Under the pieces are notes generated by a model. It was not told the origin of the DNA. It saw only the letters and a list, made by a program, of their open reading frames with translations, and made no database searches. From NCBI GenBank assembly GCA_904063045.1, contig CAJFCJ010000025.1:930001-994000 (forward strand): a stretch of 64,000 nt of DNA. Reading direction: 5' to 3'. The stretch is from Dimorphilus gyrociliatus (Eukaryota > Animalia > Annelida). The first letter of the stretch is position 1. The number at the start of each line of letters is the position of its first letter. Positions 1 through 64,000 of the stretch are shown piece after piece. A program made the translations under genes and the position numbers.

Positions 1-2327
1 CACTCATTCTATCATAAAAAACATCACAAATTCAATTGCCTACGTTGTCTCTTCCACAGAAACCATTCTTTGCATCTTCTGCAGCAGAAACCCGTTAAGA
101 TTCTACCAGCTCTTTTGTAACAAATTTAAAGTTTGATAAGAAAATTACGAACACGGAGCATCTTCTCCCATTCGACTTTGTTTTTTTGTTTATTTTCTTC
201 TCTTCTCTACCTTATTCTACTCTCTTTTTCTCTAATATAATATTTTATTCCACTTTTTCATTTTACTATATTTCTCTTTCTCTCTTTTCCGTCCTTGTCT
301 TTTCCAATCTCCTCCTTTTTCACCTTCCCCCTTCTCATCTTTCTAATTATGTTAGACTTGCGAATATAATTATTGGGCGCATTGCCAATTGAATAGTTAT
401 GAAAAGTTGATAAGATTTTAAATTGCATAATTCCCTAAACGGATTATGAAAGAATAGAATATTTAGGCATAGTCTACTAATGACTTTTGATCTGACGTCA
501 ATAGAGACAGATCATGAGAGATGAAAATGAGAGAATTTACGTCTATTACGTAATCTACGTAGAGATTATCCCTCATCACCTTTTAACCCTAGACTAGTGG
601 AGTGAGCATATCTAACACGAATATATAAAAAAATAGACGATTGCTAGGAGATAAGTATTTATTTATCCTTTGGCTTTTATAGCAATGTTAAAAATCTAAA
701 GAGGAAAACCGAGAGAACGAAAAGAATAGGAGATTTATTAAACGAAGCTTTAGTGGTCAGCTTGATCGCCTCTTTCCCAGTCTTAATTTTTGTTCATTAA
801 AATTCTTTCCTTCTCTTCCTCTCTCTCTCCTTTTTCCCTTTTTCAGCTTTCCCTCGCTATTTCAATTATTCCTTTTGTATACCAATTGTCAATTTTACTT
901 TTGTTTCTTACTAAAAGTGATTTCACTTAAAGAAACAGGAAAAAAAGATTCTAATTAACTAACCGTTAAAGAAATAATGATAATATTATTCAAAGATTTG
1001 CTTTGAATAAAAAATGAGTGGTTGATTAGCAGAGAATATGAAGTAGCATAGATTATATCGATGGAAACATTAGATAAACCTAAGAAGAGTTTTAGAGAAA
1101 GGAAAAGTGATAAAAATTCAACTCTGTAACGAAAATGATTACAATGGAGATGATGATGATGATGATTATAAAATGGCGAATTTCGTTCTTGTTTGATATA
1201 CTGGAGCACGTTTCTCTTTCCTTTCAATGAACCTCCAGCACGTAGCCTCTTCTTCCTTTACAATCTTTTCATCGTGTTCGCTTTTCTTACGATGGGAGTG
1301 AATCGAAGCAGAATAAATAGGACGCTTTTATCTAACAACGACATAAACCTTATACTTTTCCTTAAATTGGATGCATCCGACTATTTTTATAGAATTTATT
1401 TGACGATCCAAGCAAAAAAGGAAAAAAAACCAAAAACCTAGTTAAATATAGTTTTACCGTTTAAAACGTTAATCCAGGATTCATAGAATTATTACGCAAT
1501 TCTTTACTTAACTAACAATATACAATATAGAAATATATCAAAATTGTATATCATGTCGTATATTTAGCTGCCGAAGCTAAGATTTGGTCTGCATCATCAC
1601 ACTTGGAATTTTATTTAAAATTGGGTAATGGAATCGTTTATACGGATATATATATATATATATACAGTTTATATATATATACATATATATATATACTGTA
1701 CATAGTATATATGTACTTAGGCTATTGTTCAATACATGCTCGCTACATGCATATTTGAAAATTGGATTACATAACAGTAATAAATAATAATTTTTAATTG
1801 ATGAAGGCTTCGTACAGTTTCTAACATTCAAGTCTCCTTTGTTTTTCATCTGTTGTCTGATAGTTTTTGTTTGTTCTTGAATTTGTATACAAACAAATAA
1901 ATAAAGAGCAAAGGAAAGATAAATTCATGAATTGTTTAAAAAAATGGAGAAGAAGAAGAAGAAGAAGAAGAAGAAAGAGAAGAAGAGAATTAAAACAAAA
2001 AGTATATATATAGAAAAAGCATAGATTGAAAATTGAATAGGGATAAAAAAAATTGTCTCTAAATTGAATTTTATTTACTTGTTTCTTTGTTGTTTTGTTT
2101 TTGTTGTTTGGTTGTTGTTCTTTATTTTATATTGTGCTATTTGAATAATAAGTAAATCTTGTGAAAATATACTTTTCTTTCTTTTTCTTCTCATTTTTTA
2201 TAGTTTTTTTTTTTAAAGAAAAAAAAAACAAACTGTTTGAAGCGAAAAAAATTAGAACTGATTGTTCATTTTTTTTACATTTGAAAGTAAATATTCTCTT
2301 TACAACATCAACATACAGTTATATTCC

Positions 2328-2825
2328 TTATTTGGTACTCCTTCCGATTCTGACAAAACTGCTCATTGGTCTCTTACCAATTCTGACGAATGAGCTCATT
2401 CTCTTTTCTTTTTCGTCGTCAAGATTTACGTTCTTTCCAATTCTAACAAAACTGCTCATTCTCTTTGCTTTCTCATTCAATCCATCATCTATTCCTACAA
2501 AATTATTCATTTCCTTTACCGGTTGGCTCTTTCCAATTCGTACGAAAGAGCTTAGTCTTTTTTCAGGATTTCTGCCAATTCTTACGAAGGAGCTTAAAGC
2601 TCGGCCAATCCTAACAAAAGAAGATAGAGCTCGTTTACGTTCGTTCAAATCTTCGGATTGAAGATGTTTTAAGATTTCAGTTTCTTTCAAATCGCATTCC
2701 TTAATACAAGCTGCAGCTTCGGCCGTGGGAAAATTTGCCTCGCATATATCGGAGCATAAGGTTTCACAATTAGTGTGCGTGGAAGCCAACAGGACAAGGA
2801 GGATTGATAATGTGAATTTAAGCAT
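2328..2825 (-). CDS. FVRIa: FVRIamide (FXRIamide) neuropeptide precursor, 165 aa, single coding exon
   Basis: Signal peptide MLKFTLSILLVLLASTHT, a Cys-rich pro-region, then six SSFVRI-G-K/R copies (ALSSFVRIa x2, LSSFVRIa, MSSFVRIa x2, PMSSFVRIa) flanked by basic sites. A splice acceptor (ctacag|GA ATG) lies 2 nt before the ATG, so the 5'UTR is spliced. Confidence 0.95.
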   Translation of the reverse strand: MLKFTLSILLVLLASTHTNCETLCSDICEANFPTAEAAACIKECDLKETEILKHLQSEDLNERKRALSSFVRIGRALSSFVRIGRNPEKRLSSFVRIGKSQPVKEMNNFVGIDDGLNEKAKRMSSFVRIGKNVNLDDEKEKRMSSFVRIGKRPMSSFVRIGRSTK

Positions 2826-5614
2826 TCCTGTAGTGAAGTAAGCATTTATAAATTACATACTATTACCCTCTCTATTATGTTAATGTCATTAAAGAAATAC
2901 ATATATATATGCAGTATATATACAATATGTATATCTACAATTTATCTAAGATAGACCGTATTGGTATATATAACTTGAATGCTATATATAGATAAAAATG
3001 TTATTAATGCATGAACTCTAATATCATATGTATATATACTATACACTTATGATTAATTTAGGTCTATTATAATTTTGTCCTTATGCTAGGGAGAGAGTGT
3101 GAGCGAGAGGGGCAAGGAGACAGAAAAGAAAGGAAATGAATATCAAGTCAGTTAGATAAGTAAATAGATAGATAGATTGTTAAAGACAAAAAGAAAAAAA
3201 ACATGAAAAAGCTAGTTAATTTTCTAAATCTGTAACGGTTCAGCGATATTTCCTTTTTCCCTCTGTCCGTCTCTCTTTTCATTCCTTTCTGCTGGATTAA
3301 AACAAGTAAAAATACTCGACTATCTTTTTTCTCAGGCAATAGAAAATCTGGAGAAGGAAGGCCTACTCATAACGAGGGTTTGTAAATGATAGAGTGTTTT
3401 TACGAATTCATTAGTAATCTTATACAATATTTGTAAGAAATACTTCCCAAAGAATTTATTTGTTAACGTCTATATTTCCTTAATATTCTAAAATAAATAA
3501 TTTTAAATAATTGAATAAAAAGAAATTAAAGAAGACAAAGGTAACAAATAATAAAGAGGAAATAGAAAAATATTAATTTCGTTAGGTGAGCTTTAGGAAA
3601 AATGAGTAGATGCTAATATTGACAAACAGAACATGTATTGTAGAAAAGTTTGGCTATTGGAAATCCTTAAATCTAACATTTATACCATTTAAACCTATTG
3701 AAAAAAAGCTAAAATCTTAGTCCATTTTGGTCTGTCACTTTGGATAAAACCCGTCGCCTCATCCACCCCAATTAACCTTGTAATAAGTTAAGAGATGTTT
3801 GTGGGAAGGGGGAGGAAAGGGGGAGTGGATATTTGCAAACAATTGAGATATTATATATCTTTTCCCTAAGTATATACATAAAGAAAACGGAATATAAATG
3901 GGCAAAATACAAGAAAACTCCTCGATGTGGCACGTAATCGGGTCAATCAGAAATTTTTACTAAAACCAAAAGGGTCAAGAAAGCAAACTAGCAGCCTAAT
4001 TTCTTCCAAATATATTCAGATAAAGCTCTTTTTCAATACTGTCTTCAATTCGTACAGCAGAAACCTTTTAAGTTAGCCTTTTCCATGATTGGAGAAAGTC
4101 AATTTATTTGTTTCTGTTTCTCTGTATAAGGTATGTTAAACAAAAAAAAGAGAGAGCATACTTCCATCCTTGAAATGAAATTTACGTTTAATCAAAACAC
4201 TTCGGCTAACATAATTAATCGATTAAATTAAAAAATTATCATTGTACTCTTTTCATTCTAATAATTTACACTATTTAAGAAATGCAAAAAGGATTGAGTT
4301 TTTTGTGTTTGTCGTCTTAATCTTGTGGCAATGAGCTTATTCTTAGGCCTGACTTTGACAAACTATCAAACAAACTATGAAATGCTTGCTGTTATCTAAT
4401 GTCAATAGCTCTCGTTGAATGTTGTATAGGTTATAACGAAAAATAAATTTACGATATGAGGCTATCGTTCTCTTATTGTTTTCTTTTTCTTAAAATGTAA
4501 CTGACTCATTGTGTCTTTACACTTTCCTGAAAAGCATAGATATCACCTCTCGCATAATCCCTGCCTATTGTAACAAAAATCTTATTCATATTTCTCTAAT
4601 CAACACCAGGTGTTTAATCAAAGTCAAAATTCTATACAAAATTCATTGTAAAACAGCAATAAAGTATGGAAAAATATCCATTCTTACCTTCCCAAGGGAT
4701 TAAATAGTAAATTAATCCAACTTTAATATTTATTTTTAATATTTCCAATTAATTCCTTTCTTTCTTTTTAGTTAACTAAACGACAACAGATTAAAAGAGT
4801 GACGAAAAAGACTTCTTTACTCTTTTTTTTTTCAATAGAAAGCCAATTTTAATCCTTTGATTGTTTAATAAAAATTGCCTTAATTTCTCATTACTTGTTT
4901 ACCTGATTGAGCGGGAATATTTGTTATTATTTCCTGTTACTTCTCATTTTAACACTCTCTCTTTCCATCTCTCTCCCTCTCTCTCTCTCTCTCTCTTTCC
5001 CCTTCCCCCGCTCTCTGTTCCCACTAAACGTTCCAGCACAATGAGCTTTAACTTTCCTCGAAAAAAAGGCCTTCGAACCGTGTCTTCTTTAACTAAACTC
5101 ATGTTATCTAATAGCCCTGAACAAGATTTTTAATAATAATTTTACTAATGGTAAATATTTCAGACTGGGCAGGGGAAAGAAAAAAAATATACAGCTATAG
5201 TTAAAGGTTCGCTTAGGTTAATTATTTAATATCAGCCTCCTTTTTCTGTCTATTTGCTTAGCAATAAATATGAGACAAGTTACATGAATGCGAGGAAGAA
5301 AATAAAAATGACGACAAGACTAAGGTAGGGAAGAAGGAGTGGAATAGAGAGAGGGAGAGAGAGAGAGAGAGAGAGAATGCTAAATGTTACAGATATTGCA
5401 GAAGAAAAAGTAAAAAAGATGTTTTATATATTACAGTATATCCGTTAGTAATAGATATCGATTTGGTAACAATCGTAATAGAAAAATATAGAAAGTAAAA
5501 GAAAAATTATCCTTTCTTTTGGAGACGGTTAAATAAAATTAGTCTTAAATGATATTTAAAGTGCTATACGTTGTACTGTATATAGAAGGAAAAAACAAAT
5601 TAATCATTACTAAC

Positions 5615-9340: not shown

Positions 9341-11996
9341 GTACTAACATAATCAAATAATGAGCAAAGATGTCAACTTTTAAGTGAGAATATCGTGACA
9401 AATTATATGACGTTTTTTTTGTCAATTAACGATAGATTACCTCTGAGAAAGTTAGAAACTAATTGGCTGTTGCTAGGACTATTTTAAAAGTTAATTTTTT
9501 AATTTGGTTGAGTAAAAAATCCCGCCTTGAGGTAATTGTCACATTATAAGTCTTTCAGCACTTAGTACTGGAGACGCTCCGTACAAAGATATTGGAAAAT
9601 TACATAGCAAGGATACGAGGATGTCATTTTACGCAAAATTTGTTTTTCCCCTCTTTACGGTTAAACTAACGACGGCAGCACACTAGTTTCTTTTTCCTTT
9701 CTCTTTGTTTGTATTTTTTTGCCGTCCTTATCCTTTCATTGTTAGATGGCGAATGAAGAAGAGGAATCTCTCTTCTCTCTCTCTCTCTTTCTCTCTCTCC
9801 CTGTCTCTCCATATTTATTTATAATGTATTACAGAGCGTTTAAAGTCATATTGGCTACATAGGCCTAATAGTATTATTATATAATATAGATATTTTACTT
9901 TTAAACTTTATTAAAGGTACGGAGGAAAAACGTGTATAAAAATTTATCCGATTTTCTACACCACTTGTTTGACAGCAAACGGAACAGGTTCAATCGTTAG
10001 TTCACACTATGGATTTGTTTGCAGAACATACATTTATTTTCCTGTAAGTCTGATAAATAGATTCGAATACTGTTTCATCGGCTAAAGTATTACGATATCT
10101 CTATTTGAATAGACTTGCGCCATTTCCGGTCTTTTCTATAATAAGAATCATAATCTTTATTTTGCGGGAAAAGCTAATTAATCACGTCTTAAAATAAAAA
10201 CGATATAGTTTTTAAAGTAGCTATTATTTAAATATGGAAATTCCTTTTTCCTCGTTTCCTTGGCTGTAAAAGAAAAACAGGAAAATACTCTACTTTTCTA
10301 AACGATCTACCACTATGCCGCATTCTCTAATATTGACTAGTCTTGGAAGAAATGGCTTCTTCCCTAATTGCTTATGCCATATTGACATGATTTTCTCTCC
10401 AAAAGACCAACAAATCATTGGTTCGATTAATTTATTTCTCTATTTTCCTTTTGTCCCCGTTGCATTCCTTACCGTAACTGTTGTTCTTTCCTCCCATGAA
10501 TAGATTATAATACTAATAATATAAAAGCTCTTTACCTAATGTATCGTTTAAGAAGGAACTTTAACTAGATAAGGACAGAAGAGAACAAAAATTATCAATT
10601 ATATTGTTTTTTATTCATTTATTTAAATTCTTTCGCATAACAAAACATAAATCTAAAATTTGTTGTTTACAATTAAAACTAACCATTAGGATATAAATAA
10701 CTATTTTTTCCTATTTGTCATTAACCAATTGAGCAGTAGCAATATATGATTATATGACTATGATATGTTATATGCGATTTTAATACGACATTAGATAATC
10801 TATTGCTTCTAATATTATTCTTTAATTGAAAAGATTATTGAACGAGCAGAAGCGATAAGAACGGAAGAAAGAAAAAAAGTAATTAAATCAATTGATTGAT
10901 TGATTGATTTTTCAACTTTTAAAGAATATATCCTGTTTACTATTCATAGCAGAATTTATATAGAAAAAGAGAGAAAAGGTGAGTTTGTATAAGATGCTTA
11001 TAAACAAAAGTGTACGATTTCAAGTTGTTATAGATTAAATTGAGCTAACGAACGATTAAATTTTGAACGGTTTCATAAGTCAATTATTAAATCGAACATG
11101 GAAAATTTTGCAATATTAAGATATTTTTTGATATAATTTTATACAGACTGCGAATCTATAATCATAATCCCATTTTCTTCTAACTAAACGGTAAATAATT
11201 AAAAATATTTTTTTCTGGGAGAGAAGATTTAAAGATATTGAATTTTTTTTCTATTTTGTTTTCTTTTTTTCTTTCCTCCATTTTCTTCTTCTTCTTTTTC
11301 TTCCTCTTCTCCTCCTTTTTACCTAGTTTATTGTTATACTTCTTCTTTATGAGATTTTCTCAATCTTTTGAACCAACCGCCCCTGTTGTTTTTGTAAGAA
11401 AATAACTTAGAAAAATTAGTACAACACTATAGAATGTTGTGATGCTTTAATCACATCTGTTACTTATTAAAAAGCCATTCCATGCTATACAGCATATATA
11501 TATTAGTATATACAGTATATTAGTATATAAATAAAAGTATATAAAATATTATCCATTAAGTTTCTACCCTTTAATTAATGGTTCTACGTGCCATAACAAC
11601 ACTCCAAACTTTTCCTTTGAAAAAACGTTCCTCGTATTCTAGTTTATTTAATCTAAATCAATCTCTTTCTTTTGTTCTAAATTGTAACCTTTCTTTCGTT
11701 TGTTATATCTTTATCTATACCTGTCTTCGTTTATAATGATAATAACAATAAACGATACAATAGACACCCTAACTTTTATATTCACTCATTTTCTTATTCT
11801 TTAATTTTCAATCAATTCTCTTTAAGAGCATAATTAAAACTATATCATCTCTATCACTCTCTTTAGATTAGATAGAGTAGTTAAATACAATTCTATTAGT
11901 TATTTTTTTCTTTCTCTTTCTCTCTCTCTCTACGTTGTAGATGGCGTTTATATAATTATCGCCATCTGTTGTATATAATTGGAAAACGTATTATTT

Positions 11997-15784: not shown

Positions 15785-18700
15785 AATTAGTGAAATTAAA
15801 GACATAATTTTCGAGTTTTTTGTACAAAGCACAAGAATATATACATAAAGAGGAAGAGAGAGAGAGAGAGGAGATATAACAGCAAACTTTCTTTCATAAA
15901 TATCTTCAATATTGTTTTTAAAAAAATTATTAAATATCATTGACCTTCTTTTTTATGATATTCTGTAGTTATAGTGCAGGGAAAAAACAAAAAATTTAAG
16001 GGCAACTATTAAGAAAGAGCAAGGTTACAGTGTTAGAGTTTGCTTAGTGTCCTTTATACATACATACAATATATACTAATATATATAGATATATTAGAAG
16101 AAAAGTTTTCTAATATATCCTCCTCGTCACGCTGGGAAAGTCTTAGGATTTAACAGTAATATATAATGATATTAATATAAAATAGAAGATTAAACTAATC
16201 TATATTTTCTTTCTAACGAGAGAATATTGAATTTATTGTTGAATATATATTTTATAGCAAAAATGGGTTAAGAATAAGAATTGAAGAAATGCAAGACAAA
16301 AGAAGGAAATAGTGGTAAATCAACCAATCATTCATAAATGTATTTGTATATATTATAGTCATTGTTAAAGTTTATTGACTCCAATAAGGTTTTAAGCGGA
16401 ATTATTTTCATATGTTTTCTTTTATCATATTATTTATAGAATCGATTAAGCTAAGTAGGAAAACTGTAGGATTTAGGCTCAATTTTATACCTCTCACCTC
16501 TTAATTTAAATTTAATAGGCATTTGATTGTCTTTTTAAATAGGAAAATTTTCCGTCAAGATGTTTCTTAAACGGTTCATATTATTCAATTGGACTTGTCG
16601 CGCTATTTATAAACGACCGAAAACGAAATTTTTCAATTCATCAATCAAAAAATATCTACCCTCTTCACAAAATTTTGGCCTCTATTGATCTGCGAATTTT
16701 TGTATGGCCTTTTTTCCTTTCTTTATCTTTCTCTTTCAATCTTTTTCTCTACTTTTCGCTCTTTCTCTCCCTCTCCCTGACATGTTCTTTTTTAGAATTT
16801 CGTAAGTTTTAACCAATTTTTGATTAATCACGTCTTTGTAACATTACGTGAGCGAAAAGTCTCTCTAGCAAGGTGTAATTTAATAGGTAGAATAACTTAT
16901 TGTGTCAAATTGTTAAAAAGCATAAAAAGGAAGACGAAAACTTTATGGTAAAAACTATTTTATGTAGTTTTGCGTCTAGATGGCGTTGTGAAAGGGTATT
17001 AAACTTTCAAAGTGGAGGAAACACACCAAAATAGGTAATGCGTATGTGGAAGAGAAATGTAAGGAATTTCTTTTTTATATAAGACGCATAATAATAATAA
17101 CAAAATTTTTAATATATAAGCTCATTTCTAATACTTATTTCTCGCCCCCTTCCTCCTCTTTCTCCTCTTTCTCCTCTCAAATCAATAGCTAGCTTTCCAA
17201 ATTCAATTGAACGCGGAGAATTTACTTTAGACAAAAATTATGTAACGAAATATTTTTACACTCGATAATTGATAGAAAACAGATTAAATAATCAACAATT
17301 ACTGAATGAACTGTAGACATCTGCTTACATCTATATTTTAACTGTATACAATGTACGCATTAGTAGTTAAATAATGCTCTTATTACTTAAACTCCTTAAT
17401 AGAAGATAGGGAAAAGAAGAGAAAACAAAGGGGAATACTAATTAAAATTAAAAATATTGTTATTGTGAAATTCCCCAGCAAAACCTAAGAGATAGAAATA
17501 GAAGAACAAATGTAATGTTGTATAGTTCAAGAAACTTGTCTCTACTTTCGGCCGATAGCTATATACTATATATATGCTGTATAGTAAAAGCCTTGGCTTA
17601 GAACTTGTAAAAAAAAGCGATTTAAATGGAACAAAACTGTATAAAAATAGGGAATACAATATGTTTATATAATATATAAATATGTCTATTTAGAAACAAA
17701 TTTATAATGAATAATTCCAGAAAAGGGATAAATAATCAATTTTTTCCCCCCGCAATCAAAATTTCCCCTTTCCTCTCTTTCTCCTTATTTTTCCCCTTTC
17801 TGTCAAACTATTTTATATTCTTATCTCCCCAGCAGCTTTTATCAAAACATAATAGCATTTTTCTCTTATCATAGAATATTGACACCAATACATTTATTTT
17901 TAGTAAAGTATTTTTCGATCACTCTGACGTCCAGTTAAAGAAAAACTTTGTACAAAGTTTCATCCTAAAATGACTAAGGATTTTATACTGGGTTCAAATG
18001 AATAAATACTGATTATGTACTGTAAATCAATAGATTTAATACAAGTGTTATATATTAGAATATAAACTATATACTTTTTACTGAGAAAGAATAACAAAAA
18101 TAAACAAACAAGCAAAACAGTTACATGCCTTTTTTCTATAATTTCTCATCCTTTTTTCATGATTTTTTTAATACAGTTTGTTGTTTTTGTTTTCTTAGAG
18201 AAAACAGAAAAATAAAAACAGTCAGATCAATTTTAATAGCCTTTAAACAATTATTATAAAACAAAATACAAAGAGTTTTATTATTATTTTTGACTCTCTA
18301 TCTTTCAACATTTTCTTTTAACTATATATTGTTTATATATATATATATATATATATATACTGTATTGATATATATAGCTTTAGTATTATCTTTATAGCGA
18401 ATTTTATTAAATTGTACATAATATTTTCGGCTCTTGTCCTTAAGATAATTAAGACAATATATACAATTTCTCTCTCTTTCTACTCTAGTTATATATGTAA
18501 TAGATTGGATTTAGGGAAAAACTTTATCTTCCACTCTTCCCTGTATAACAAATATACTACGCCTATAATCGATACAATACAACTAATTAATCCCAATGAT
18601 TATCTATTTAATGCTTTGTTTTAATTTATTTATACTTTTTTCTGGTCATTTTGAAAAGAATCAAAATCGATTATTACAACAAATGGAAATGTGTTAATGT

Positions 18701-24004: not shown

Positions 24005-24412
24005 AAGAAAACTTTCTCATGAATATTAAGTTCCTTGTCAACGAATGAATAAACATTACGTATATTTTATCTTCATCAAGGAATGGTAGGAGAAAAAAGG
24101 GTTTTAACCATATTTTAGGGGGATAAATGATGAATTAATCAATCTGAAGGATACAAAATGAAGAGAGGTATTTAAGGATGACAAACTTAACAAATATATA
24201 CAATCTCAGTAGTGAATATATTAGATGTATAATATATATATATAGTATATAGATATCTATCATTTTAATATACCACAGAGACTGTTTATAATATCTAGAT
24301 TGGGTGATTTAATAGAAATCGAAGTGTTTTCGTAGTTTTTCCAACAATTAAAAACCGATGAACAATTCATGTTTGCAGTTCAGTGTTTAAATATACAAAT
24401 ACTGTATATTAG

Positions 24413-24460: not shown

Positions 24461-24462
<2 letters not shown>

Positions 24463-33618: not shown

Positions 33619-33655
<37 letters not shown>

Positions 33656-44209: not shown

Positions 44210-45264
44210 AAAAGAAGCATATACAGTATATATCAAGCAAGCATTAACAGTAGCCTATAATGATACATATAATATACAGTATATACATATATAGTTAAAG
44301 AGGTATTTAAGCTATTGATCTGATTTATTTGGAAGTTTAGACCTAGAACGAAAGAAGAAAGGATATGAAAAACTTCTATATGAATTGGATTAATTTTAAC
44401 ACAATTTCAAAATCAAACGAATAATAAATAAACCAATTTCGCTTTATTGTTTCTATAAGTATTATTCTTATTGGAATAAACAAGATTATTATAGGCCTAT
44501 AGTTTTTCTTTTTCTTTTCAACTAAATTTATAACTGTATAAGAGCTGATGAGTAACTGTAAATATCTTAATATCAGACTCAAAAACGTATATATATAAAA
44601 GACAAGTATGCAAAAAATTATGGGGAGCAAAAGCTTAGATTGAAAGTGTTGTTGTTTTTTTTATATAAAAAAAAAAGTAAAAGAACAAGTTGAAGCGCTG
44701 AAATGTAAATGTAGATAAGACTGATAAAATTTCCTATTAGCCCTTTGAACAACTAATTCGACAGATGTCAGCACTTTGGTTTTATTTTTTTTCCCTTTCT
44801 GTAGATATTATATTTATACACAGTATACATTTTCTGTATATTTACCGTATGTATCTGCACCCAAATGTATATTATACATATGTAAATAACATTTACGCAT
44901 TATATAATTATTACAAGGGAAAGGGAGGGAGTATGTCAAGGTGAACAGATGTAAAACATTTCAATTATATTTATTAAGAATAAAATATGATTGTTTCTTT
45001 AAAACAAGTAGAAAGTAATAGGTCCAGGCACCTAAAAGAAACTAAATTCTGAGCGAAAATAGCCGGTGCAAACTGACTTTTAGCACCTGTTTAACAAGCA
45101 TAACTTTTCTGACAAACATATGCATAAATAAGTAGGAGGGCATATAATCCGAGGTTAAATGTACCTCTCTTCTAGAAGCCGAATAGAACTGGTAAGATGA
45201 TGACTAGTCAAAAAGTTGGTGCCGAGTAGTGCGGTATAGGTGCTGCTTTAGAATTTCTACATTA

Positions 45265-50900: not shown

Positions 50901-52108
50901 ATATATATATATATACAGTATATGTATACTGGATATATAGAACTTTCAAAAAATATCTATTCGCTTAAAACGCACTGTATACAGTATGCTGTTTAATCGG
51001 AAAAGATACAACACTTATGTATATCAATAGTTTATTTAAATGAGATTTTTCTCTTCTTTTCTTCTTCTTTTGGTCCCCCTTTAGGAAATCTTTGTTTAAT
51101 AAAAGGCGATTAAGACATCCCCTACCCTCTTCCTTCATATCTATTCTTTGTATCAGTTAATAGTTTTTGAACTGTTAAACTATGGCTAACATCCTTAATC
51201 CTTTACTTCATTTTTATTATTCATTGTGATTTATTGATATTTTAATAGCAAAGGAGAAAACTGCTGCAGTTTATATATAATCAAATGATAAATAATAAAA
51301 TTCAAGTCTATTTGATCGGACAAACCAACTCAGATTTGCTTATGAATAATGCGCAAGATAGAATGAAACTTCTCACGCTTTTAATCTTAAGACAATATTG
51401 AACGAATTCTAAAAAGCCGATAGCAAGCATTATGCCTCCAACAAGATGTACATAAGCTATTGTCTAATGTATAGTTTACCCATTTGTCAATACCTAACAT
51501 CCGTTCCATACAGACTGGTCTCCTGTTCAAGAAGGAAAAGGTTCAAGTCAATTTAAAAGTCGGAGGGTAGTGACTACTTTAACGATTGTTAATGCTAATA
51601 TAATTTCTTGTTTGGACCAAGTTTACTTGTCAGAAAGTTGTTGCAGTCGTACTCTGTAAAGAATAGTTTTTATCATTAAAAGGTTAATAAAGAGGAGAAT
51701 AGCCAAGAGATGACATGAAGTTTTACGAATTCCTTTATCCTAATGTATATACTCTTCCTTGGATTGCCAAAAATTTCCTAATTTTCCACATTATACTTGG
51801 TAAGTAGACTAAACTCTTCCTCTTTTTTCTAATCAAGAACAGGGTATATCTGCTCTATTTTCCTTTATCTCTCTATCAATTCAGAAGAGTGACAAAGGAA
51901 ACGAGTAGCAAAACTGCATGCGTTAAAATGGAAAAATTGCTATAATATACAATTAACGTAAAATCTGAATAGAAAATATAATGGATGCTCAGAGATATTT
52001 TTGCATTATTTCCAATAAGGACTTGCTTTTACTGAATGAATAAACGCAGTTTTCATTGATATAGAGCTTTTCTTCCCTATGTAGATCAGCTTTCTTGAAT
52101 GTAAATTC

Positions 52109-52613: not shown

Positions 52614-55600
52614 ATGGACGAGGACGATTATCATTTTTATTCCTTTATTTTCCTTTTTTGATATTTTATTGAATCAACTAATTCATAACTGTTGACGGTA
52701 TTTAAAAGAGAAAGAGATATTGAACTATTTTAATAAAATATTAATTATAAATATACATAGAGAAAGTAATAAACTCTCAATTAGGTGTATTTATCTACAA
52801 TACCTTTGACAACAATATCCTTTACTGAACATTACTGTTAATACAATTTACATTTTGTTATATTCGAAAGCAACATGAAAGACTAGGCCTAGAAGAAACA
52901 ACTCTTTTCTCTATTAACGGTTTATTCATAACTTCAAGACATATTATACTCTATAGTATGGTAATAGCCATAACAACAACTCTTCTGCTTCCGCCTATTC
53001 TATTTTCTATTAAACACCTTTACTGGTTCGGAGACAAATTTTATAAAAGAGTCTACTCTCTGCTTAACTACTAAACGTCGTTTGGGTATATATATATATA
53101 TAAAGAGAATAATCGCTATTAGACTTGATTTCAATCCAATAGGGAGTAATTAGTATGGAGAGAGCTGCCGCTGTTAAAGTGAGCTAACGATTCGTTAGAC
53201 ACCTAGAGGCACTGTACTCAATTATAAAAGTAACTTGAAAGAGGCGTTTTTTTCATGAACGAGATTTGAAGAATAAGAAAGTAGAAGATAGAAAAGAGGA
53301 GATAGGCGAAGAGACCAGAATAGATAAAGAGATAAATGCTAAAGAGAGAGAGAGAGAGAAAGAAAGAAAGAGAAGGGGAACAGGAGGAGACAAAATACGA
53401 GAAACTGATAAGAAACTATGAGGAGAAAAAGTCTTTTTGAATTATTTTAATTATAGTCATTTTATGATTACTAAATCACAAAAAAAAGATCTTTCTTCTT
53501 TGTAATAGTAGCTGTTTCCTTTTCTGTAGATCTATCTGCCTCTCTCTCTCTTGGTGGTTTTCCTCCCTTCCCCCAGTCAGTCTTGTATCTCAATTATGTC
53601 GAATCATTAGCGCAAGACCATAATTCAAAGGATATCATAAACAATCAGAACTAAAAGTGAAATAGATAAATACAGTACATCTAAATAAAACAACATTACG
53701 ACACTTTCGATGGCTTTTTAAGCTTAATTTCCTAATTTTTCTGATAGTTTCCAAGTAATTTATCATCTTTTTCCAAAGAAAAGCAAATTGAGAATTCATT
53801 TGGTAAAAATGCTTTATTAATTGTAATTAGAAGCTTCTAGTAGTGTTTTTTTTTATTTCTATTTTTCCTCTTTTATAACAAAAATTAGACATTTAATAAC
53901 GATATTTCCCGTCTCGTTCCCTAATATTAATAAGCGTGTAGGTCTTCGTAAAGAAAAACTTTGATCTTTTTTCTTTGTAATTTTCTTAAATAGTAAAAAT
54001 AATTAAAAAAAATGTTAACAATAGGCTTTTTCTCTTTTTTTTCATTCTATATTTTTGCATGCTTCAACAACAAACTTTTATTATATATTTCCAATTTAAT
54101 TTACACCTTTTTTCAACTGAATCATTCAATACTTGAACAGTTTGTCGCCTTTTTTTTATCTTTTAATCCATTATTAAAAAGTATCGAGTTAAAAATAAAA
54201 GCCTTGTGGTAAACATGTTTTTCTATTACAAACATTCTACAAAATAGTAGAATATATATATATATATATGTAGTAGATACCATAGAAATATTTATATATA
54301 CAACATCGGCGCATATACAGTATATATAGTATTATATCTACTGTACACGGTCTGCACTGATATGCCATCTGTAGTGTAAAGTTTTATTTTTTTTTGGTAT
54401 TAGCTATCTTGTAACGGTTTTTACGAGCTTTTACAATGTTACAACTTCTTATTTAACTAAAAAGCAATAAATATGAACATGAAGAAGAAGGAGAAGGATG
54501 AGGAGGAGGAGAGGGAAGAGGAGAATAGCTTCTTCGACACGAAGTGAATGGGATAAAAAGAGGGCAGGCGACAGATAGAATGAATGGTAGGTATATAGGG
54601 CAAATTATAAAATTAAAGAAGGGAGAATTGTTGCAGAAATGGCCGCTTAACTAACCATTTAGAATAGTTGTAGGAAAAGAAAACGTTATAAATCTCACTT
54701 ATAACATATCTACTAATTGCTGAGAAAACAATATGGATAATGGGTTACTTGACCTTAATTTCGTAAATATAATAAGGACTTAATCATTTTTTTCCCCTTA
54801 ATAACTTAATGTATAAAATTTGGTAATAATTAAGGCACACATAAAGATACAAGGGAATAGAGAGCGAGCATAAAAGAAACAGATGATAAGGGAGGGGGAG
54901 AGAATATAAAAGAGGGAAAAAACAAATTCTCTCCTTAAACCAGTCATTAGTATCGTGTTTTTGTAAAGTTACAAGAATACAAAATTATACCTTAGGTCTT
55001 ACCGTGTCAAAGGATTAATGTATTAAACGTTATTCATAAGTAGAGGAGTTTATTATTAGTAAAATAGCTGCATTTCCTTCACTAATTCCGAGGTGAGAGT
55101 GGACTCATTCAAAGTAGCCTTTTTGTTATTTGCTAATCCATTTACAGAGATGGAAAGAGAGTGTAAGAGAGTAAGAAAGGGTGATATAATAGAGAAAGAA
55201 AGGAAACGCAAAGGATAGAACGGAGACAGATAGGGAAAGAGTAAGAGAAAAAGAAAGAGAGAGAGAGAGAGAGAGGGAGGGAGGGAGGGAGGGTATGCAA
55301 TAGATAGAAATAAGAAAGACGAATAGGATATTGACCTGGGTGGTTTGTATTATTTTAACTAAATGGAAGTAACGTCGACGGTGTCTGCGATTAGCATAAG
55401 AGATAAGCAACCTTTTACGACAGTGCAATTGAGTAGGAAAAGCGAATATTGAATTTGCTAGAATTGCGAAACGTTATCGTTTTTTTCCGAATATATTTTT
55501 CCTCCTTAAATTCAATTGGTTAGATTGGTGGCAAAGGCAGTTAGTTTAGCAAATATTACGTAATCAAACTAAAAGAATTCTAGTAACGTTTGGCCCCATC

Positions 55601-56359
55601 AGCTCTTTACGGTGTTGCACTAATTCCTTCTTTGTCTGACCTTGAAGGGGAAAAGGGAAGAGGACACTGTAAAGCTTTGTGGGCGTGTGACGAGTTGAAA
55701 CCATATCAAACGTATATTCTGTCAAAGTCGAATTTGGTAAAACCATAAAAATCCTTCAAGCCAGAAATTACTAAATTAAACATTAGATAATTTTCGTTTC
55801 GATTCCTCCTACATCTTCTGTGGTTCTTCCTTGCATTTTCTTTGGCTCTTTCCACAAGATGTTTTGCATCTTTATCAAAGATTAACTAAAAAGAAACACC
55901 TAATATATTATGAAAGGGAAAATAAACTAGAAATATGAAAAGAAGAGGAAAGAGTAGGAAGTTAACGAAGAGGCAGAGAGGAAAAGAAGAGAATATTGGA
56001 GATAAGTGGTCTGAAGGAAAATGAACAAGTTCATTAGCTTTATATTTAATAATAATTCATAATAGTGAAATAGGGAAAGGAGTTAATAATTTTCCTATCA
56101 TCTTCTTCATCTGATTATTACGCATATATTCAAGATTGGAGAAAAAAAAAGTGTTTCAATCAATAAGATATTGGCGCCTGGATGGTCGCAAAAGAAAATG
56201 ATTTGAATCGATTATACGCTTGATCGGTTAAAACTATTGGAAAACAATTTATCGATATATTTTATGCAAAGAAAAAGGTAGCGAGGAAATTGTGGATAAA
56301 TCCACTGAAAATCTCAATCTTCTGTAGATAGGGTAAACAATATATAAAATATACAGTAT

Positions 56360-56408
<49 letters not shown>

Positions 56409-59400
56409 CATATATTGTCTCTTTTTTGCATAATTGGGTTGCTTCTTGGGTAATTTGAGAAGGAGGAAAAACCAGGCCAATAATGAATATTTTTTTCAGT
56501 TTTTCCACTTCTTTTATATATAAAAAGAAAAAAAGTAAAAATAGCTTGTCCTCTCTGTGATTCGGAAACGTTTCGTTGGATTTATGATAATGAACATAAG
56601 CTCTTTAACGATTTATTTCTCATCGATCAATGACTTGGAACAATGTATCGTACCACATACGTATTAAGATTCTATAGTCTTTCTCTTCTTTCTCACTTTC
56701 GGAAAATACAAAGTATATGCTAATAACATTTTAAAGAGATATTTACCTTCTTTATAAATTTATTTTCTATTTTGCTCCTTATCTTTCTTTTTCCTACCTC
56801 TCTCTCTCTCTCTCTCTCTCTGTCTCTGTCTCTGCCGATCTTTGTCTTTCTTTCCCTCCCTCCCTCCCTCTCTCTCTCTCTCTTTCTCTTTAGCGCCATT
56901 TTTATTCAATTTTTTCACCGACATATATCTTACTAAACTTCACCACGTGACAAGATTATACATCCAATTATGGTAGTTTCACAATGACAATAGCTGAAAG
57001 TAATCACTTAGACGATAAACAAACGGAAATATAATACGGTAAACCGAATTGATCTTGCTGGCTCCTTCACACAATTTTGCTGACCTCTATTTGCATATTA
57101 AAGCCCCCGTGCAAATTTTTCCCGTAACAAGGACAATTGAATCACAGCTAGTTTTTTAGTATGTCTTCCGAATTGGATTTTGTAATATCGACACACATAC
57201 AAAGTATCTGACCAAATATAGAGGCTTTACGAAAAGTCAATAAAGAACCGGAGATGATCCGAAAAATTCCCTAGAAAGTGAGGCAAAGTAGAAGGATAGA
57301 GAGTTAGGAGGAAGATAGTAAGAAGACGGCAGAAAAGAAAATAAGAAAGTTTTTTCCCTTTTTAAGAAGAGATTAAAAGTTTTTAACGAGTATAGCATAT
57401 AATAATAATAAGTATATAGGCATAAAGGTAAAGTATGTACGCTCTATAGTAATAAATAAAAACATCTAAAGTTTTTACACTAAGAAAAGAAAGAGGAGAG
57501 GGAAGGAGAGGAAAGAAGAGGAGAGGAGAGGAGCGAAGAGGAGAGAAGAGAAGAGAAGAGAGGAGAAAACGGCAAAAGCGAATAAAACACACTTTTGAAA
57601 TAATTTTACACTGGAAATTAGTGAAAGATGAAAGGAAAACGTAATAAAACGGGGAAAATTTCGTTAAGTTAAAGTCACGTAGATGAACAAATGAATAAAC
57701 TTGATATTTTATCATATAAATTTAATAAATGTTTTATCAACTTTAACGTCTAAAAGTAGGCGGATAGTTTAGTGGAGTAACTTAAAATATATCATCCTTT
57801 CATTATTTCTTCAACTTATTACCGTTACCTTATTGACAAAAGTCGTTTTATTTATTTGTCGGTTGCTAAGAGACTTGACAATCAATATACGCTGTGCAAC
57901 TATTCTAGTAAAAATTAAGAAAAGAAACATTATATTTATCAATATTTTTATTAAAACTTGTGAAAATATATCAAATTTTATAAAGGCACTTGATTGAATG
58001 CTTATGTGTTTTGGACTATATGTACGGAATGAACAAACGAACGAACGAATGAATTGATGAATTAATGAATGAATGATTTCATGTGTATACGTATGTGTGC
58101 GTGTGCGTGCGCGTATTATTATCGTTAATTCTAGAAATAATACAGTAAATAAAACATGTAAAATGTTTCGCTATGAACAATATTTAGCATTTATCTAAGG
58201 GCTATGTAATTATTAGTATATATATTCTGTATATATAGGGAGAGGGAGAGACATATAAATATTATGTACGTACCGTATGTACACAGAGAATATTGTATAC
58301 GATATTTAACAACTATCGTCCTTTTTAAGTTACTGCAATCTTAATAAAATGTAAACTTACTTATATTCTATCTTTTCCAGTATTTTATTCTTTATTCTTT
58401 TTAGTAAGTAAGATTTAATTGTTTAAAATATTACCTAAGTTGTTTAAACGTGTCTATTACTGTATATTATAAATTATACAATTCGCCTGTTGTTATGTTG
58501 ATTTTTTTTGTTTGTTTGTTTGTTTTTTTTTCTTTCTTTTTTCCTTCCTCCCTCTCATTTCCTTCCGTCGTTCACTTGCCTGCTCCATTTGTATCTCAAT
58601 ATTTCGTATTTATCTCGTAAGGAAAATAGTATCAATATTTTCTTTATTAAATACTAGCGTCTTTTTGTTAAAATGTACTTTAAAGATGCTTAAGGCATCT
58701 TAATCAAAACAACGAGATTTATTAAATCTTAATTAATTTGCTATTTTTTATCTTCAAGCAGACTAAAGAGGATGTTAAAATTTCTTTACAAAACAAATTA
58801 GTCAATCAATAAGGTAATATATATTAGAAATATGTTTTAAATTAACGAATACTTCCCCTTAGTCGGTAAAAGGGAAAACAATCTATTTTTCTATTTATTC
58901 CTATCTTATGCATAGTTTATACGGTATAAGAATGTGATATATAAATTTATATATATTATATATATATTAATATATATATATATATATATATATATACATT
59001 CCTTCAATCAGGTTATTCAGAACAGCGGCCTCTCAAAGAGAGACAATACGCTTTATCATTCCGGCATGAATCAAGTGATACAGGACAATGCTTCTGCTCA
59101 AGAGGAAGGAAAAGGAAAAATACCAAAAGAGAAATGAAAAGAGATAGAAAAGAGGGAAAGAGGAAGGAGAAGAAAGTATGCATCATAAATATTTTGGTTC
59201 ATTTTAATGGCCTTCATTTGAAATATTCGTTCTAGATTAAGAAGAAAAGCTAACCACATTTGCATATATTCAGGTGTCAATCTTTAAAGTTCATATCGTA
59301 AGGAAATGAAATAAATGGACTTAGAAAAAGTCAAAACAACTTGTAGATTGTTTTCGTTTTCTAAAAGGATATTTTCACCTGTAAAACTTGTTTAACTATT

Positions 59401-59826: not shown

Positions 59827-60355
59827 TAACTGCCTATCTCTCAAGATAATACATCTATCCAACTAATATTTCTTATATGTTGGTGAATAACGAAGAATAG
59901 CAAAAGTGTATATAAGTTTCTTATATATAGGTATATACTTATTCAGCTCTAATGCAATACGTGTCTTGTATACTTTTAATTAATCTTATACAGTATATTG
60001 TTATGTTGTTGTATCGGCAGGAAAGATGTTACTTGTCAACAGAGGAAACCAGAAAAGAATAGGAAATTTAACATAGTAAAATAAAGAAAAAATGGAAAAT
60101 AGATGGAAAAATATCTATTCGAGAAAGATAAACAAGAAAGTATAAAAATGAAAAGCAAACGTAAAATAAAACAAAAAGAGGAAAAAACAAATCAAAAAAC
60201 ACATAGAAAAGAGTCTAATTTAAAAGAAAAAAAACCATTTATATTGTTAAAATGCTCATTCGGATTTCTTTTCGCCTTTCCTCTTTTTTTTTTCTTTCTT
60301 TCTTTTTATTTTTTTTTATTACTAGACTCTCGAAAGTCTATACGTTTATCTTTCA

Positions 60356-60844: not shown

Positions 60845-62800
60845 CTTTTCTTTTTTATATATGTAAATTTACTTTACGCAAACGAAAATAATTTCCGTGA
60901 GCATTTTCCTTCAATCCTTCTTAACAAATTAATTAAAAAATACTCATTACGAAGAGACTGAAACCTATACGTATAGTAATTCATTAATTTATTTGCTCAT
61001 TTTTTTCTACTTATTCATTCATTCGTCCTTTCGTTTGTTCGTCATTCATTCATTCATTCATTCATTCATCCATCCACTTACTCATTTATTCACTGGTACA
61101 TACTCTTAGTCACTCTCTATTCTGTTCATTTATTACTGCTGTATATTTATTCACTTTGCATACCAATGGCAAATGATTTAGTCAGTTCTAATCTCTAAGC
61201 CTTCATTGAGAGTCAATTCGTCAACAATGAATGCGTTAATTATTAGTAAAAGGTGTTGAAAAATTGATTGATATTACATAATTAGGTATAAGTGTTACGG
61301 CTGGTCGGTAATTATAGGATTTATGATGGAAAATATGCAAAAACACGAGCGAAATGGGGCATGAAAACGATTATTGTTGTAGGGAAAAAAAATAAAAAAA
61401 AGGCAATTTTCATTGGCCTTTCTTTTATCTATAGAGAATATCTACTGTCTCACAAAGGACGGGTTAGAAAGGTAATTTTCCTCCTTTTTCTTCAAGAAGA
61501 GAAAGAGAAAGAAACATTCTTTTATTTCTTATCAACTTGAATAAATATTAATAAGAGATTCTTTAACTAATAGATAAAGGAAATTTTTCTAGGCATTTTA
61601 GCAATAATTAGAAAATCGATAACGGGTGTTCTCTTTTGTTCTTTTGACAACAGCGGAATGTGTTAACAGAAGGAAACGTTTATTAATATATACTATTATA
61701 TCTGGTATATATAAATCTATAAATAGAATTAGAATATATATATATATGTACTGTATATATCTTCTTTAGTACGTATATGTAAAACTGTAAAGGATAATTA
61801 GTAAGAATATTCCCTTAATTAATTGTAGCTTTCCGAAAATGACTTGCAAAGGGGAAATTTCTCCTTCCATTTAGGCTCTTCGATTTCCTCAGACAATTTT
61901 AAAATTTATTAACTAAGCTGTCTAGTTCTTTTTTATTAAAGCCTATTTTGATGGTAGTTTTATACATACGCATTGCTCTTTTTGGAGGAGGATTAATGCA
62001 TGTTCGAACAGAAATATACATTCCTCCCAATCAATGAGTATATTCTTATAACTTCTATCATCTTTTATAAAGTAATTAAAAAACAAAGAAAGACAGGAGA
62101 GACAAATAAAAGGAAGAGAAGTAAAGAGAATAAAACTATTCTGTTATTATTGAGCTGATGATACTTATTATTATTACTATTATTGCTGTTATTATTACCA
62201 ATGATGCACAAGGGTTTTTGACTTGGATTACTACTTAATAAGCGTTCGTTATCCGTTCTTTTTAGAATTACATGCTACTTTGAAGATAATAATGGTTTTA
62301 TATTAACGAAAGTATGCCATGACGATACGTAATATATACGAAGGATTTACGTGACCTACTTTCACGCCTTACTTCTTTTCCCCAAGATTTTCATCCTCTT
62401 TCCTATTTGTGCTTAATCTTTTGTCAAGTAAATTTCTCAAATCGTCACCCAAAGAAACTTTACGTTTTGACTATTCATTTATAGTTTTCTATTATTTATA
62501 GAATATATTTCTTTCCATTACATAAATTACTTAATTCTCCCGATTCATTTCATAATAGCTAGTAACAACATGTGATTCATTCCTTCTTCAAATACCAATA
62601 TAGTATAAAAAAAAAGATTCTAATGATTAATTATTTCGTTTTCCGAATGACCTAATTGCTGTTTCAATTCTAACGTCCGCTCTTTTCTGTACAAGATTAT
62701 CGTATGCGTGAGAGACAGACTCGTGAGAAAGCTTCTGGATATATATTGTACATTATAGCAAAACATACATACATCTATAGATAGATACATAAATATACAG

Positions 62801-62955: not shown

Positions 62956-62965
<10 letters not shown>

Positions 62966-64000
62966 GCTGTAGAGAGGTAGACTGTGACGCCAAACTGTTC
63001 GATAAAACCAACTTTGTATCCATCTATTTTGTTACTTTTATAGACAAATATTAAACCATCCATCCTGATTAGATTTTGGCTAAAAATTCCAAATTTCCAC
63101 CTCGCTTACTTTTACAACAGTAGCCAAATGCACTTTGTATATCGTTTAGAAGACTGAAATTGCCTTAAAACGAGGACATATTATTTATTCTTATATCGTC
63201 TCCAGCCTATTTCTGATCATTCAACGCGTCAAAAAGAGATCTATACGTACATATAAGCACACGTATAGATTTGTCTAACAGCGTTTATTTATTTGTATGT
63301 ATACTTCTGGTAACATTAATAATCACGTTACGTATTATTGGGTTATAGCTTTCAAAGGACACAGATGCTGTATAGTAGGTTGTAGTGATAAAACTGCCCT
63401 CTGTTGTCAAAATACAGAAACTTTTTACAAATTATGTTACGTCTTTTTCTCATTTATACAAGTTGTTTGACGACGAAAGAGAAGGAAAGAGAAAGAATAC
63501 TAAGGAATAGAAAATGATAAAAGTCATTTTTTATGAACAAGTTATTACAAGATAAAAACTTTATTAATATTAATACATTAAAGTATGAAAAGGGAAAAGA
63601 CTATCACTCTACTATTGTGCTATTGTACCATTTACTGTGTATAACATCATTTCATATGATATGCTATATGTTTAATTATGATAATAAGAAAAGTACTTTC
63701 TATCCTTTTACAAGTAGAAAATGTATTTATAGATATGCAAAAGGAATTTTTAACTATTTCCTTTTCATAAATATTCAATAGTTGGTACGTTAATAACGTA
63801 TCTTACAGTTATTTTAATCTTTACTTATATTTTCATATAGACGCCTTTGATGGTCATAGTATCTCTTGTCTATTTTCTCTCTTTTACAACATGCGCTCTA
63901 CCTATATCTTCTATGTAAAAAAAGGAAATATCCATAAAGATTTGTTTATCTTCGTATACACGAATGCAAACACACATTACAGTATATATTTATAGTTAGG

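What the first reader, a model, noticed from the sequence alone, without database searches (positions are those of the whole stretch)
1694..63984. Non-coding DNA is peppered with ATATAC[A/T]GTATAT, the canonical Sleeping Beauty-type excision footprint
Seen: ten exact 13-mers (11508, 24457, 33364, 33437, 34798, 44219, 44272, 50911, 54313, 56349) and at least 36 TAC[A/T]GTA heptamers, in both orientations, none in coding exons. A rough independence estimate at 30% GC gives ~0.03 13-mers and ~15 heptamers; TA-run bias raises the first figure. I noticed no copy of the same-composition control ATATAG[A/T]CTATAT. Established: Sleeping Beauty-type Tc1/mariner elements end in CAG...CTG, prefer ATATATAT targets, duplicate TA and leave TA-C[A/T]G-TA on excision; ATATATAT plus 5 nt gives exactly this 13-mer. 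Inference: a dense fossil record of cut-and-paste excision in a region with no element bodies, possibly linked to genome compaction. A sequence-specific protein-binding site is the alternative.
Basis: partly seen in the sequence, partly recalled or inferred. Interest (0 to 1): 0.78.

Follow-up and report, generated by a model that had tools for sequence, protein, structure and literature searches.

The report
Transposon exit scars in TA repeats
The short palindrome scattered through this worm's non-coding DNA is most likely the 5-letter scar left each time a Sleeping Beauty-like jumping gene, which still lives in this genome and lands in TA repeats, cuts itself out; it is a readable record of past jumping, not a cause of the small genome.

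Summary
Observation confirmed. The window holds exactly the ten ATATAC[A/T]GTATAT sites listed. It has 37 TAC[A/T]GTA, against 7.9 +/- 2.9 in dinucleotide shuffles.

The genome is 77.9 Mb; earlier scan notes call it the annelid Dimorphilus gyrociliatus. Genome-wide the 13-mer occurs 4,511 times, against 60 for the GWC control, 126 for CSG and 33 for the reversed word. CAG/CTG makes up 38% of all fillers of ATATA-NNN-TATAT. It is the commonest interruption of TA tracts, ahead of single substitutions.

The genome carries a young Sleeping Beauty-like DD34E Tc1 family of 10 copies, at least 99.3% identical. It has TA duplications, CAG...CTG ends and a strong TA-tract preference, and it has older relatives. 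Excision scars are the best reading (0.8).

I found no site with filled, empty and scarred alleles. One copy in the rDNA spacer has only empty paralogous units. The link to genome compaction is not supported: each scar adds 5 bp, and about ten active copies at ordinary excision rates would suffice.

The scan has reported this signature on at least eight other windows of this genome. Three were followed up, with the same reading.

The parts
11508..11520 (.). 13-mer scar, core CAG, about 480 bp past the end of the anion-exchanger exon ORF
   Evidence: 4 and 3 alternating A/T bases outside the heptamer
24457..24469 (.). 13-mer scar, core CTG, closing a 40-nt pure TA tract
33364..33376 (.). 13-mer scar, core CTG, in an intron of the nicotinic-receptor-type gene
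33437..33449 (.). 13-mer scar, core CTG, 73 bp after the previous one
34798..34810 (.). 13-mer scar, core CAG, same gene, last intron
44219..44231 (.). 13-mer scar, core CAG, starting 10 nt after the stop codon of the sulfotransferase ORF
44272..44284 (.). 13-mer scar, core CAG, 53 bp further on
50911..50923 (.). 13-mer scar, core CAG, closing a 19-nt TA tract
54313..54325 (.). 13-mer scar, core CAG; a second heptamer lies 23 bp on
56349..56361 (.). 13-mer scar, core CAG, a few bases before a long TA tract
18358..18364 (.). heptamer at the right edge of a 24-nt TA tract
21057..21070 (.). two abutting heptamers, CAG then CTG, 7 bp apart
22667..22673 (.). heptamer inside the 9-mer ATACAGTAT
24400..24406 (.). 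heptamer 60 bp before the 24457 scar, other side of the same TA tract
31323..31329 (.). heptamer in 9-mer context, intron
33668..33674 (.). heptamer with 2 and 3 flanking alternating bases, just after a TG repeat
50980..50986 (.). heptamer 66 bp after the 50911 scar
59989..59995 (.). heptamer in 9-mer context
1694..1700 (.). heptamer ending an 11-nt TA run, no TA run on the right
5432..5438 (.). heptamer with TA context on the right only
5574..5580 (.). heptamer, 4 alternating bases on the right only
58458..58464 (.). heptamer, one-sided context (right, 3)
61749..61755 (.). heptamer next to a TA run broken by one G on the left, 5 alternating bases on the right
63978..63984 (.). heptamer, right context of 5, at the window end

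Best explanation
The motif is the donor-site scar of cut-and-paste Tc1-type transposons. A resident Sleeping Beauty-like DD34E family inserts at a TA, mostly inside (TA)n tracts, and duplicates that TA. When the transposase later cuts the element out, each flank keeps three terminal bases (CAG / CTG) as an overhang. End joining then closes the break as TA-CAG-TA or TA-CTG-TA. In an ATATATAT target this gives exactly ATATAC[A/T]GTATAT, 5 bp longer than the original site. Scars are neutral, sit in non-coding TA tracts, and accumulate and slowly decay. Shown here: the motif's excess and its specificity for CWG; the matching element ends, target duplication and target preference; the similarity of the transposase to SB; and the recent activity of the family. 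Inferred: that this transposase makes a 3-nt staggered cut, and that the scars came from it and its older relatives.
For: (1) Specificity. The genome has 4,511 ATATACWGTATAT against 60 GWC, 126 CSG and 33 reversed. CWG is 38% of all 11,773 ATATA-NNN-TATAT. In 264 kb, TATA-CWG-TATA occurs 64 times, GWC 0, CSG 3 and the 2-nt-stagger form CATG 2.
(2) CAG/CTG is the commonest of all interruptions between two alternating-AT runs: 41, against 27 for the commonest single substitution. It abuts 19% of TA runs of 10 nt or more and 40% of runs of 20 nt or more. A 3-nt phase-shifting insert cannot arise from TA repeats by point mutation.
(3) Resident element. There are 10 copies of 1,657 bp with TA|CAGCCGCGGTC... 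ends on both sides. They differ by 0-10 positions in 1,500, and most have intact 345-codon frames. Its best match among solved structures is the SB100X catalytic domain, E 8e-30, with DD34E spacing. A second family ends TA|CAGGGGATTTCA. Relatives at 71-74% identity align right up to the terminus.
(4) Same target. 68% of extant ends are preceded by TATATA, against 2.3% of all TA. Scar half-sites show the same alternating A/T gradient. 6 of 9 copies with both flanks known lie in ATATATAT.
(5) Independent events. Close pairs (100 bp or less) number 36 against 10 expected, and the central base agrees in only 17 of 36.
(6) Decay products are present. CSG is 7 times its own reversed control, and TAG/CTA and CAA/TTG are the next commonest cores. 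This is as expected for neutral scars.
(7) The second commonest phase-shifting interruption, TA-C-TA / TA-G-TA, is a known non-canonical SB footprint (bioRxiv 10.1101/659086). The canonical footprints are described in PMC6943129 and the ATATATAT preference in PMC8934666.
Against: No single locus was found with filled, empty and scarred states. The one copy with paralogous sites (rDNA units) shows only empty sites, TA or TATA. A scar in the same spacer is identical in all units. Extant CAG-ended copies number about 10-30, while the excess of heptamers is about 12,500, so long-term turnover must be assumed. Some perfect 13-mers form 9-bp-spaced arrays with the same central base (one search list), so slippage has amplified a minority of them. 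The cleavage stagger of this transposase is untested. Scars beside long tracts lie at the tract edge more often than uniform insertion predicts, and this is unexplained.
Confidence: 0.8

Rival explanations
1. The palindrome ATAC[A/T]GTAT is a binding site for a dimeric DNA-binding protein and is kept by selection in introns and intergenic DNA.
For: It is a near-perfect palindrome with a free central base. Copies cluster (36 close pairs against 10 expected), as homotypic site clusters do. One copy starts 10 nt after a stop codon. The perfect core far outnumbers mutated cores.
Against: The equally palindromic GWC version is 75 times rarer. The motif is tied to TA microsatellites and to tract ends. 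Abutting copies such as two heptamers 7 bp apart make poor dimer sites. Decay products are enriched over their own controls. The published ATAC-seq motif analysis of this species, as far as its main text goes, names CTCF and no such motif. A transposon with exactly matching ends and target exists.
Confidence: 0.07
2. The motif is a product of microsatellite dynamics alone. One or a few ancestral interrupted units (for example a 9-bp TATACAGTA unit) spread by slippage, unequal exchange or conversion among TA tracts, without any transposase.
For: Tandem Repeats Finder reports periods of 13 and 17 containing the motif. In the genome list, several perfect 13-mers are 9 bp apart, with the same central base in 7 of 8 tight pairs.
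Against: Most copies are single, in unrelated flanks on all contigs. In 264 kb, tight pairs agree in the central base in only 3 of 9, and pairs within 100 bp in 17 of 36, which is what independent events give. Slippage cannot move a unit between unlinked tracts, and it does not explain why the unit equals TA plus the resident transposon's terminal three bases.
Confidence: 0.08
3. The motif is the conserved tip or core of a very abundant, otherwise decayed miniature element (MITE) or other dispersed repeat.
For: The species paper reports MITEs whose inverted repeats match mariner elements.
Against: Flanks of the ten window copies share nothing beyond TA richness. In 264 kb the 87 TATACAG not followed by TA are followed by unrelated sequences, with no recurring family. 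Self-comparison finds no repeat family around the motif. The exact terminus of the young family occurs only 19 times, all on full-length copies.
Confidence: 0.03

Closest known systems
Canonical excision footprint of Sleeping Beauty (TACAGTA / TACTGTA), Tc1/mariner superfamily
   Same: Identical heptamer, a TA target duplication and CAG...CTG element ends. The target preference is palindromic ATATATAT. The resident transposase's best match among solved structures is the SB100X catalytic domain (E 8e-30) with DD34E spacing.
   Different: This is a natural annelid element, not a reconstructed fish one. The scars are inferred from genome statistics, not seen in an excision assay. The TA-tract preference of surviving copies (6 of 9 in ATATATAT) is far above the 2% reported for SB100X, although selection on survivors may inflate it.
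Engineered SB variants H187V/P and K248R that redirect integration into TA repeats (PMC8934666)
   Same: Strong bias for alternating AT beyond the 8-bp core and enrichment in TA simple repeats away from exons (here).
   Different: The annelid protein carries Pro at the position aligned to SB K248, and HMMER places a 3-residue gap at SB 185-187. Whether these differences cause the preference is untested.
Tc1 and Tc3 of Caenorhabditis elegans
   Same: Same superfamily, TA target and CAG-type ends (own knowledge).
   Different: They are described as cutting 2 nt inside the element (own knowledge; PMC6943129 says 2-4 nt across the superfamily). The corresponding TA-CA-TG-TA scar is not enriched here: 2 against 64 in 264 kb.
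Genome-wide excision footprints found by aligning two rice species (PMC4423477, title and abstract only)
   Same: Excision scars of DNA transposons used as a genome-scale record of activity.
   Different: There the scars were found by cross-species alignment of sites. Here a single genome shows them as an over-represented word, because target and scar are both so specific.

Membership tests
Tc1/mariner (Sleeping Beauty-type) excision footprint | Sequence TA + three terminal element bases (C-A/T-G) + TA | tested here: met
   in the window. and 43 genome-wide. Permuted cores are 36-75 times rarer.
Tc1/mariner (Sleeping Beauty-type) excision footprint | A resident element with a TA target duplication and CAG...CTG termini | tested here: met
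   19 ends of 10 copies read TA|CAGCCGCGGTC. A second family reads TA|CAGGGGATTTCA. Other Tc1-like families (L001/L005, L008) seem to end differently, and about 140 further hits could not be examined.
Tc1/mariner (Sleeping Beauty-type) excision footprint | DDE/D transposase of the Tc1 class encoded by that element | tested here: met
   Pfam DDE_3 at 3.7e-19. SB100X catalytic domain at E 8e-30 over 211 residues, with 34 residues between the second D and the E.
Tc1/mariner (Sleeping Beauty-type) excision footprint | Scar context equals the element's insertion preference | tested here: met
   TATATA precedes 68% of extant ends, 11% of heptamer half-sites and 2.3% of all TA, with the same alternating gradient.
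Tc1/mariner (Sleeping Beauty-type) excision footprint | At one site, alleles or paralogues that differ by element / empty TA / 5-bp scar | tested here: inconclusive
   Filled against empty was seen for the rDNA-spacer copy. No scarred unit was found there or in the neighbouring spacer. No 5-bp indel was found among the fetched loci. Further fetching was blocked.
Tc1/mariner (Sleeping Beauty-type) excision footprint | 3-nt staggered cleavage by the transposase and end-joining repair | not testable with these tools
   Indirect evidence only: the 3-nt scar is enriched and the 2-nt form is not.
Protein-binding regulatory palindrome | Positional conservation or a fixed position relative to genes | not testable with these tools
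   No sister genome or chromatin data were available. Sites lie in introns, after a stop codon and between genes, without obvious order.
Tandem repeat (micro/minisatellite) unit | Copies head to tail with a constant period | tested here: not met
   Only a minority are in arrays. Most are single, and neighbours differ in the central base half the time.
MITE or dispersed repeat | Shared sequence beyond the motif | tested here: not met

The most novel reading that the evidence does not exclude
A large share of the roughly 12,500 excess scars could mark once-fixed elements that were removed without reinsertion. Excision would then have deleted some 20 Mb (12,500 x 1.66 kb) and contributed materially to the shrinkage of this genome. 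The extreme TA-repeat targeting of the surviving family would be a natural safe-harbour strategy that let it persist in a compact genome.
Probability: 0.1. Interest if true: 0.75.

Novelty: new member of a known kind. Interest (0 to 1): 0.48.

Why it matters
If the reading holds, a single assembly of this genome carries a countable record of cut-and-paste transposition: thousands of scars against about ten living copies. That would allow three things. Excision rates and history could be estimated from scar number and decay. It could be tested whether transposons shape microsatellites, since the scar is the commonest interruption of TA tracts and touches 40% of the long ones. A natural transposase with the TA-repeat, gene-avoiding targeting that was engineered into Sleeping Beauty for safer gene delivery could be studied. 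It does not by itself explain the small genome.

Tried and rejected
(a) 5-bp indels among all fetched loci and within the 264 kb: only chance alignments of low-complexity TA sequence.
(b) rDNA units as natural paralogues of a filled site: empty sites were found, but no scar polymorphism. All length differences were multiples of 2, with none of 5.
The termini of about 140 further transposase hits are therefore unknown.
(e) MITE origin: rejected.
(f) A Tc1/Tc3-type 2-nt scar (TA-CA-TG-TA), the double-end form TA-CAGCTG-TA and other permuted cores: not enriched.
(g) Palindromy as such: rejected by the GWC control.
(h) Tandem duplication as the main source: rejected by the 50:50 central base in neighbouring copies, but kept as a minor contributor.
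(i) Literature searches for a described genome-wide TACWGTA signature found only experimental SB footprints. The species' genome paper does not mention it in its main text.
(j) The heptamer count of 24,999 may be a cap. It is nevertheless consistent with the ratio of 13-mers to heptamers in the samples.
Full report
WHAT IS THERE. The window is G000:C25:930001-994000 of a 77.9-Mb assembly in 349 contigs. Earlier notes of this scan name the organism as the miniature annelid Dimorphilus gyrociliatus. I did not verify that by sequence. There are 37 TAC[A/T]GTA heptamers (shuffles give 7.9, sd 2.9, maximum 17). The same-composition control ATATAG[A/T]CTATAT is absent. Of the 37 heptamers, 10 are full 13-mers, 9 more lie in ATACWGTAT, and 6 have a TA run of 3 or more bases on one side. 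The remaining 12 have little or no TA context, about what chance predicts. The 12 weak-context heptamers start at 6984, 18018, 19982, 20985, 22551, 30919, 31395, 32005, 33456, 53671, 54339 and 58141. I do not list them as parts.

HOW STRONG IS THE SIGNAL. Genome-wide counts are as follows:
- ATATACWGTATAT: 4,511.
- GWC core: 60.
- CSG core: 126.
- The word read backwards: 33.
- All ATATA-NNN-TATAT: 11,773. Two of the 64 possible cores therefore supply 38%.
- TACWGTA: 24,999, against 12,506 for its reversed control. The first figure may be a cap.

I also fetched the 200 kb upstream of the window and analysed 264 kb together:
- There are 168 heptamers, against 37, 42, 66 and 80 expected under Markov orders 1 to 4. 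The controls TAGWCTA and TACSGTA sit at their expectation.
- TATA-CWG-TATA occurs 64 times, GWC 0, CSG 3 and CG 2. The 2-nt-stagger form CATG occurs 2 times and CAGCTG 0.
- Among all interruptions separating two alternating-AT runs, CAG/CTG is the commonest (41). It is ahead of the commonest single substitution (TA-C-ATA, 27).
- It abuts 19% of TA runs of 10 nt or more and 40% of runs of 20 nt or more.

A three-base, phase-shifting insert cannot be derived from (TA)n by point mutation. Palindromy cannot be the cause either, because GWC is just as palindromic.

THE ELEMENT THAT FITS. A search of the genome with Pfam DDE_3 gave 150 scored matches from 353 candidates, many with open frames of 330-365 codons. 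One family (loci L009-L011, L013-L031) has 10 copies of about 1,657 bp. All 19 readable ends are TA|CAGCCGCGGTC.... The copies differ at 0-10 of 1,500 positions, so the family has moved recently. Its 330-aa protein matches the SB100X catalytic domain best among all solved structures (E 8e-30). It has 34 residues between the second Asp and the Glu, and it scores on DDE_3. A second, low-copy family ends TA|CAGGGGATTTCA. Copies 71-74% identical to the first family align to within a few bases outside the CAG terminus, so the lineage is old in this genome. Other Tc1-like families (L001/L005, L008) appear to end differently.

SAME TARGET. Of the 19 extant ends, 13 (68%) are preceded by TATATA, against 2.3% of all TA dinucleotides. 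Six of the nine copies with both flanks readable sit in ATATATAT. Heptamer half-sites show the same alternating A/T gradient fading with distance: 41% are preceded by ATA, against 7.5% in the background. Two extant copies have a perfect scar 6 bp from their own end (L015, L025). Sleeping Beauty prefers ATATATAT, but only 2% of SB100X insertions hit it. The engineered H187V and K248R variants raise this to 21-39% (PMC8934666). In the HMMER alignment the annelid protein has Pro where SB has K248, and a gap at SB 185-187. This is a lead, not a result.

MECHANISM. Established for SB (PMC6943129; bioRxiv 10.1101/659086):
- The non-transferred strand is cut three bases inside the element.
- End joining then leaves TACAGTA or TACTGTA.
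- Less often it leaves TACTA, TAGTA, TACATA, TATGTA, TACGTA or TATA.

Applied here, TA in ATATATAT becomes TA-CWG-TA, giving the 13-mer. Three further observations fit:
- (i) Neighbouring heptamers are clustered: 36 gaps of 100 bp or less against 10 expected. Yet they agree in the central base only 17 times in 36. That is as expected for independent events in a hot tract, not for slippage.
- (ii) Heptamers 7 bp apart (21057/21064) fit a second hit directly beside the first scar.
- (iii) The one-base phase-shifting interruption TA-C-TA / TA-G-TA, a known minor SB footprint, is the next commonest insert (12).

Decay is visible. CSG is 7 times its own reversed control. TAG/CTA and CAA/TTG, the C-to-T products, are the next commonest cores. 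I take this as neutral ageing rather than selective maintenance. TAG/CTA could also be minor footprints.

DIRECT TEST ATTEMPTED. One copy (contig C223) lies in the rDNA intergenic spacer, about 210 bp past the 28S 3' end. In six other rDNA units on C5 and C164, the two flanks of that copy abut or overlap by 2 bp. These are empty sites reading TATA or TA. This shows a recent insertion, but no scar. A heptamer 1.3 kb away in the same spacer is present in all units. No 5-bp indel involving the motif was found among the fetched loci. Two tools stopped further work. The filled/empty/scar series therefore remains the missing proof.

NUMBERS AND COMPACTION (inference). The heptamer excess over the reversed control is about 12,500.
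- A 7-base word is lost at about 7 times the per-site substitution rate.
- A steady state therefore needs scars to fix at about 0.1% of the genome-wide point-substitution input.
- For a per-site rate of 1e-9 to 1e-8 per generation, that is 1e-4 to 1e-3 scars per genome per generation. Ten copies each excising at 1e-5 to 1e-4 would supply it, which is within what I recall for Tc1/mariner elements (own knowledge, not checked).
- A new scar allele fixes like any neutral mutation, so the elements need never have been fixed or numerous.
- Scars add 5 bp each, about 62 kb in all.

The data therefore do not call for a purge of elements. They do not exclude one either.

RIVALS. A binding site is disfavoured by five points:
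- the GWC control;
- the tie to microsatellite ends;
- abutting copies;
- visible decay;
- the perfect match to a resident transposon.

Pure microsatellite dynamics explain only the minority of 9-bp arrays. A MITE origin is excluded by the lack of any shared flank.

CONTEXT IN THE WINDOW. No transposase or other transposon domain occurs in any ORF of 90 aa or more. No Tc1-like protein match occurs in the 264 kb. Nine heptamers lie in introns of a nicotinic-receptor-type gene (about 30.3-35.5 kb). Two 13-mers follow the sulfotransferase stop codon.

PRIOR WORK. The scan has at least eight notes of the same signature on other windows of this genome, three followed up with the same reading. These are not independent evidence. 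I found no paper describing it.

VERDICT. Excision scars of a resident SB-like Tc1 lineage are the best explanation (0.8). The compaction link is unsupported.

Noticed in passing
L010 / L030 / L031 (G000:C223:6170-10823); paralogous units on C5:624-652 kb and C164: One copy of the young Tc1 family is inserted in the rDNA intergenic spacer about 210 bp past the 28S 3' end. Six other 9.1-kb rDNA units in the assembly have the site empty.
   Followed up: partly
L030:90-173: An 84-bp stretch of the rDNA spacer matches about 17 dispersed places at 81-85% identity. It is a small dispersed repeat of unknown kind.
   Followed up: no
264 kb, C25:730001-994000; in the window at 18358, 24460 and 50914: Scars beside long TA tracts sit at the tract edge. 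In all 10 cases with 22 or more flanking alternating bases, the short side is only 1-6 nt. Extant copies are less lopsided (9|15, 3|17, 8|22). Either insertion prefers tract borders or tracts grow on one side after scarring.
   Followed up: partly
L009:1363-2352 (minus strand): The transposase has Pro at the residue aligned to SB K248, and a gap (or Val in an ungapped reading) at SB H187. Engineered changes at these two positions redirect Sleeping Beauty into TA repeats.
   Followed up: no
window 30331-35504 (+): A nicotinic-receptor-type gene (Neur_chan_LBD and Neur_chan_memb exons) carries nine heptamers in its introns. Another note of the scan reports alternative M2 exons here.
   Followed up: no
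window 44219-44284: Two 13-mers lie 10 and 63 nt after the stop codon of a sulfotransferase ORF, so they are probably inside its 3' untranslated region.
   Followed up: no
L009:780-830 and L009:2720-2760 (G000:C14, both sides of one Tc1 copy): The two flanks of this copy carry similar scar-containing sequence in inverted orientation, which suggests an older local inverted duplication or earlier events at the same tract.
   Followed up: no
G000:C14:179484-181140 and C14:218225-219881: Two copies of the young family lie 39 kb apart on one contig, as expected from local hopping.
   Followed up: no
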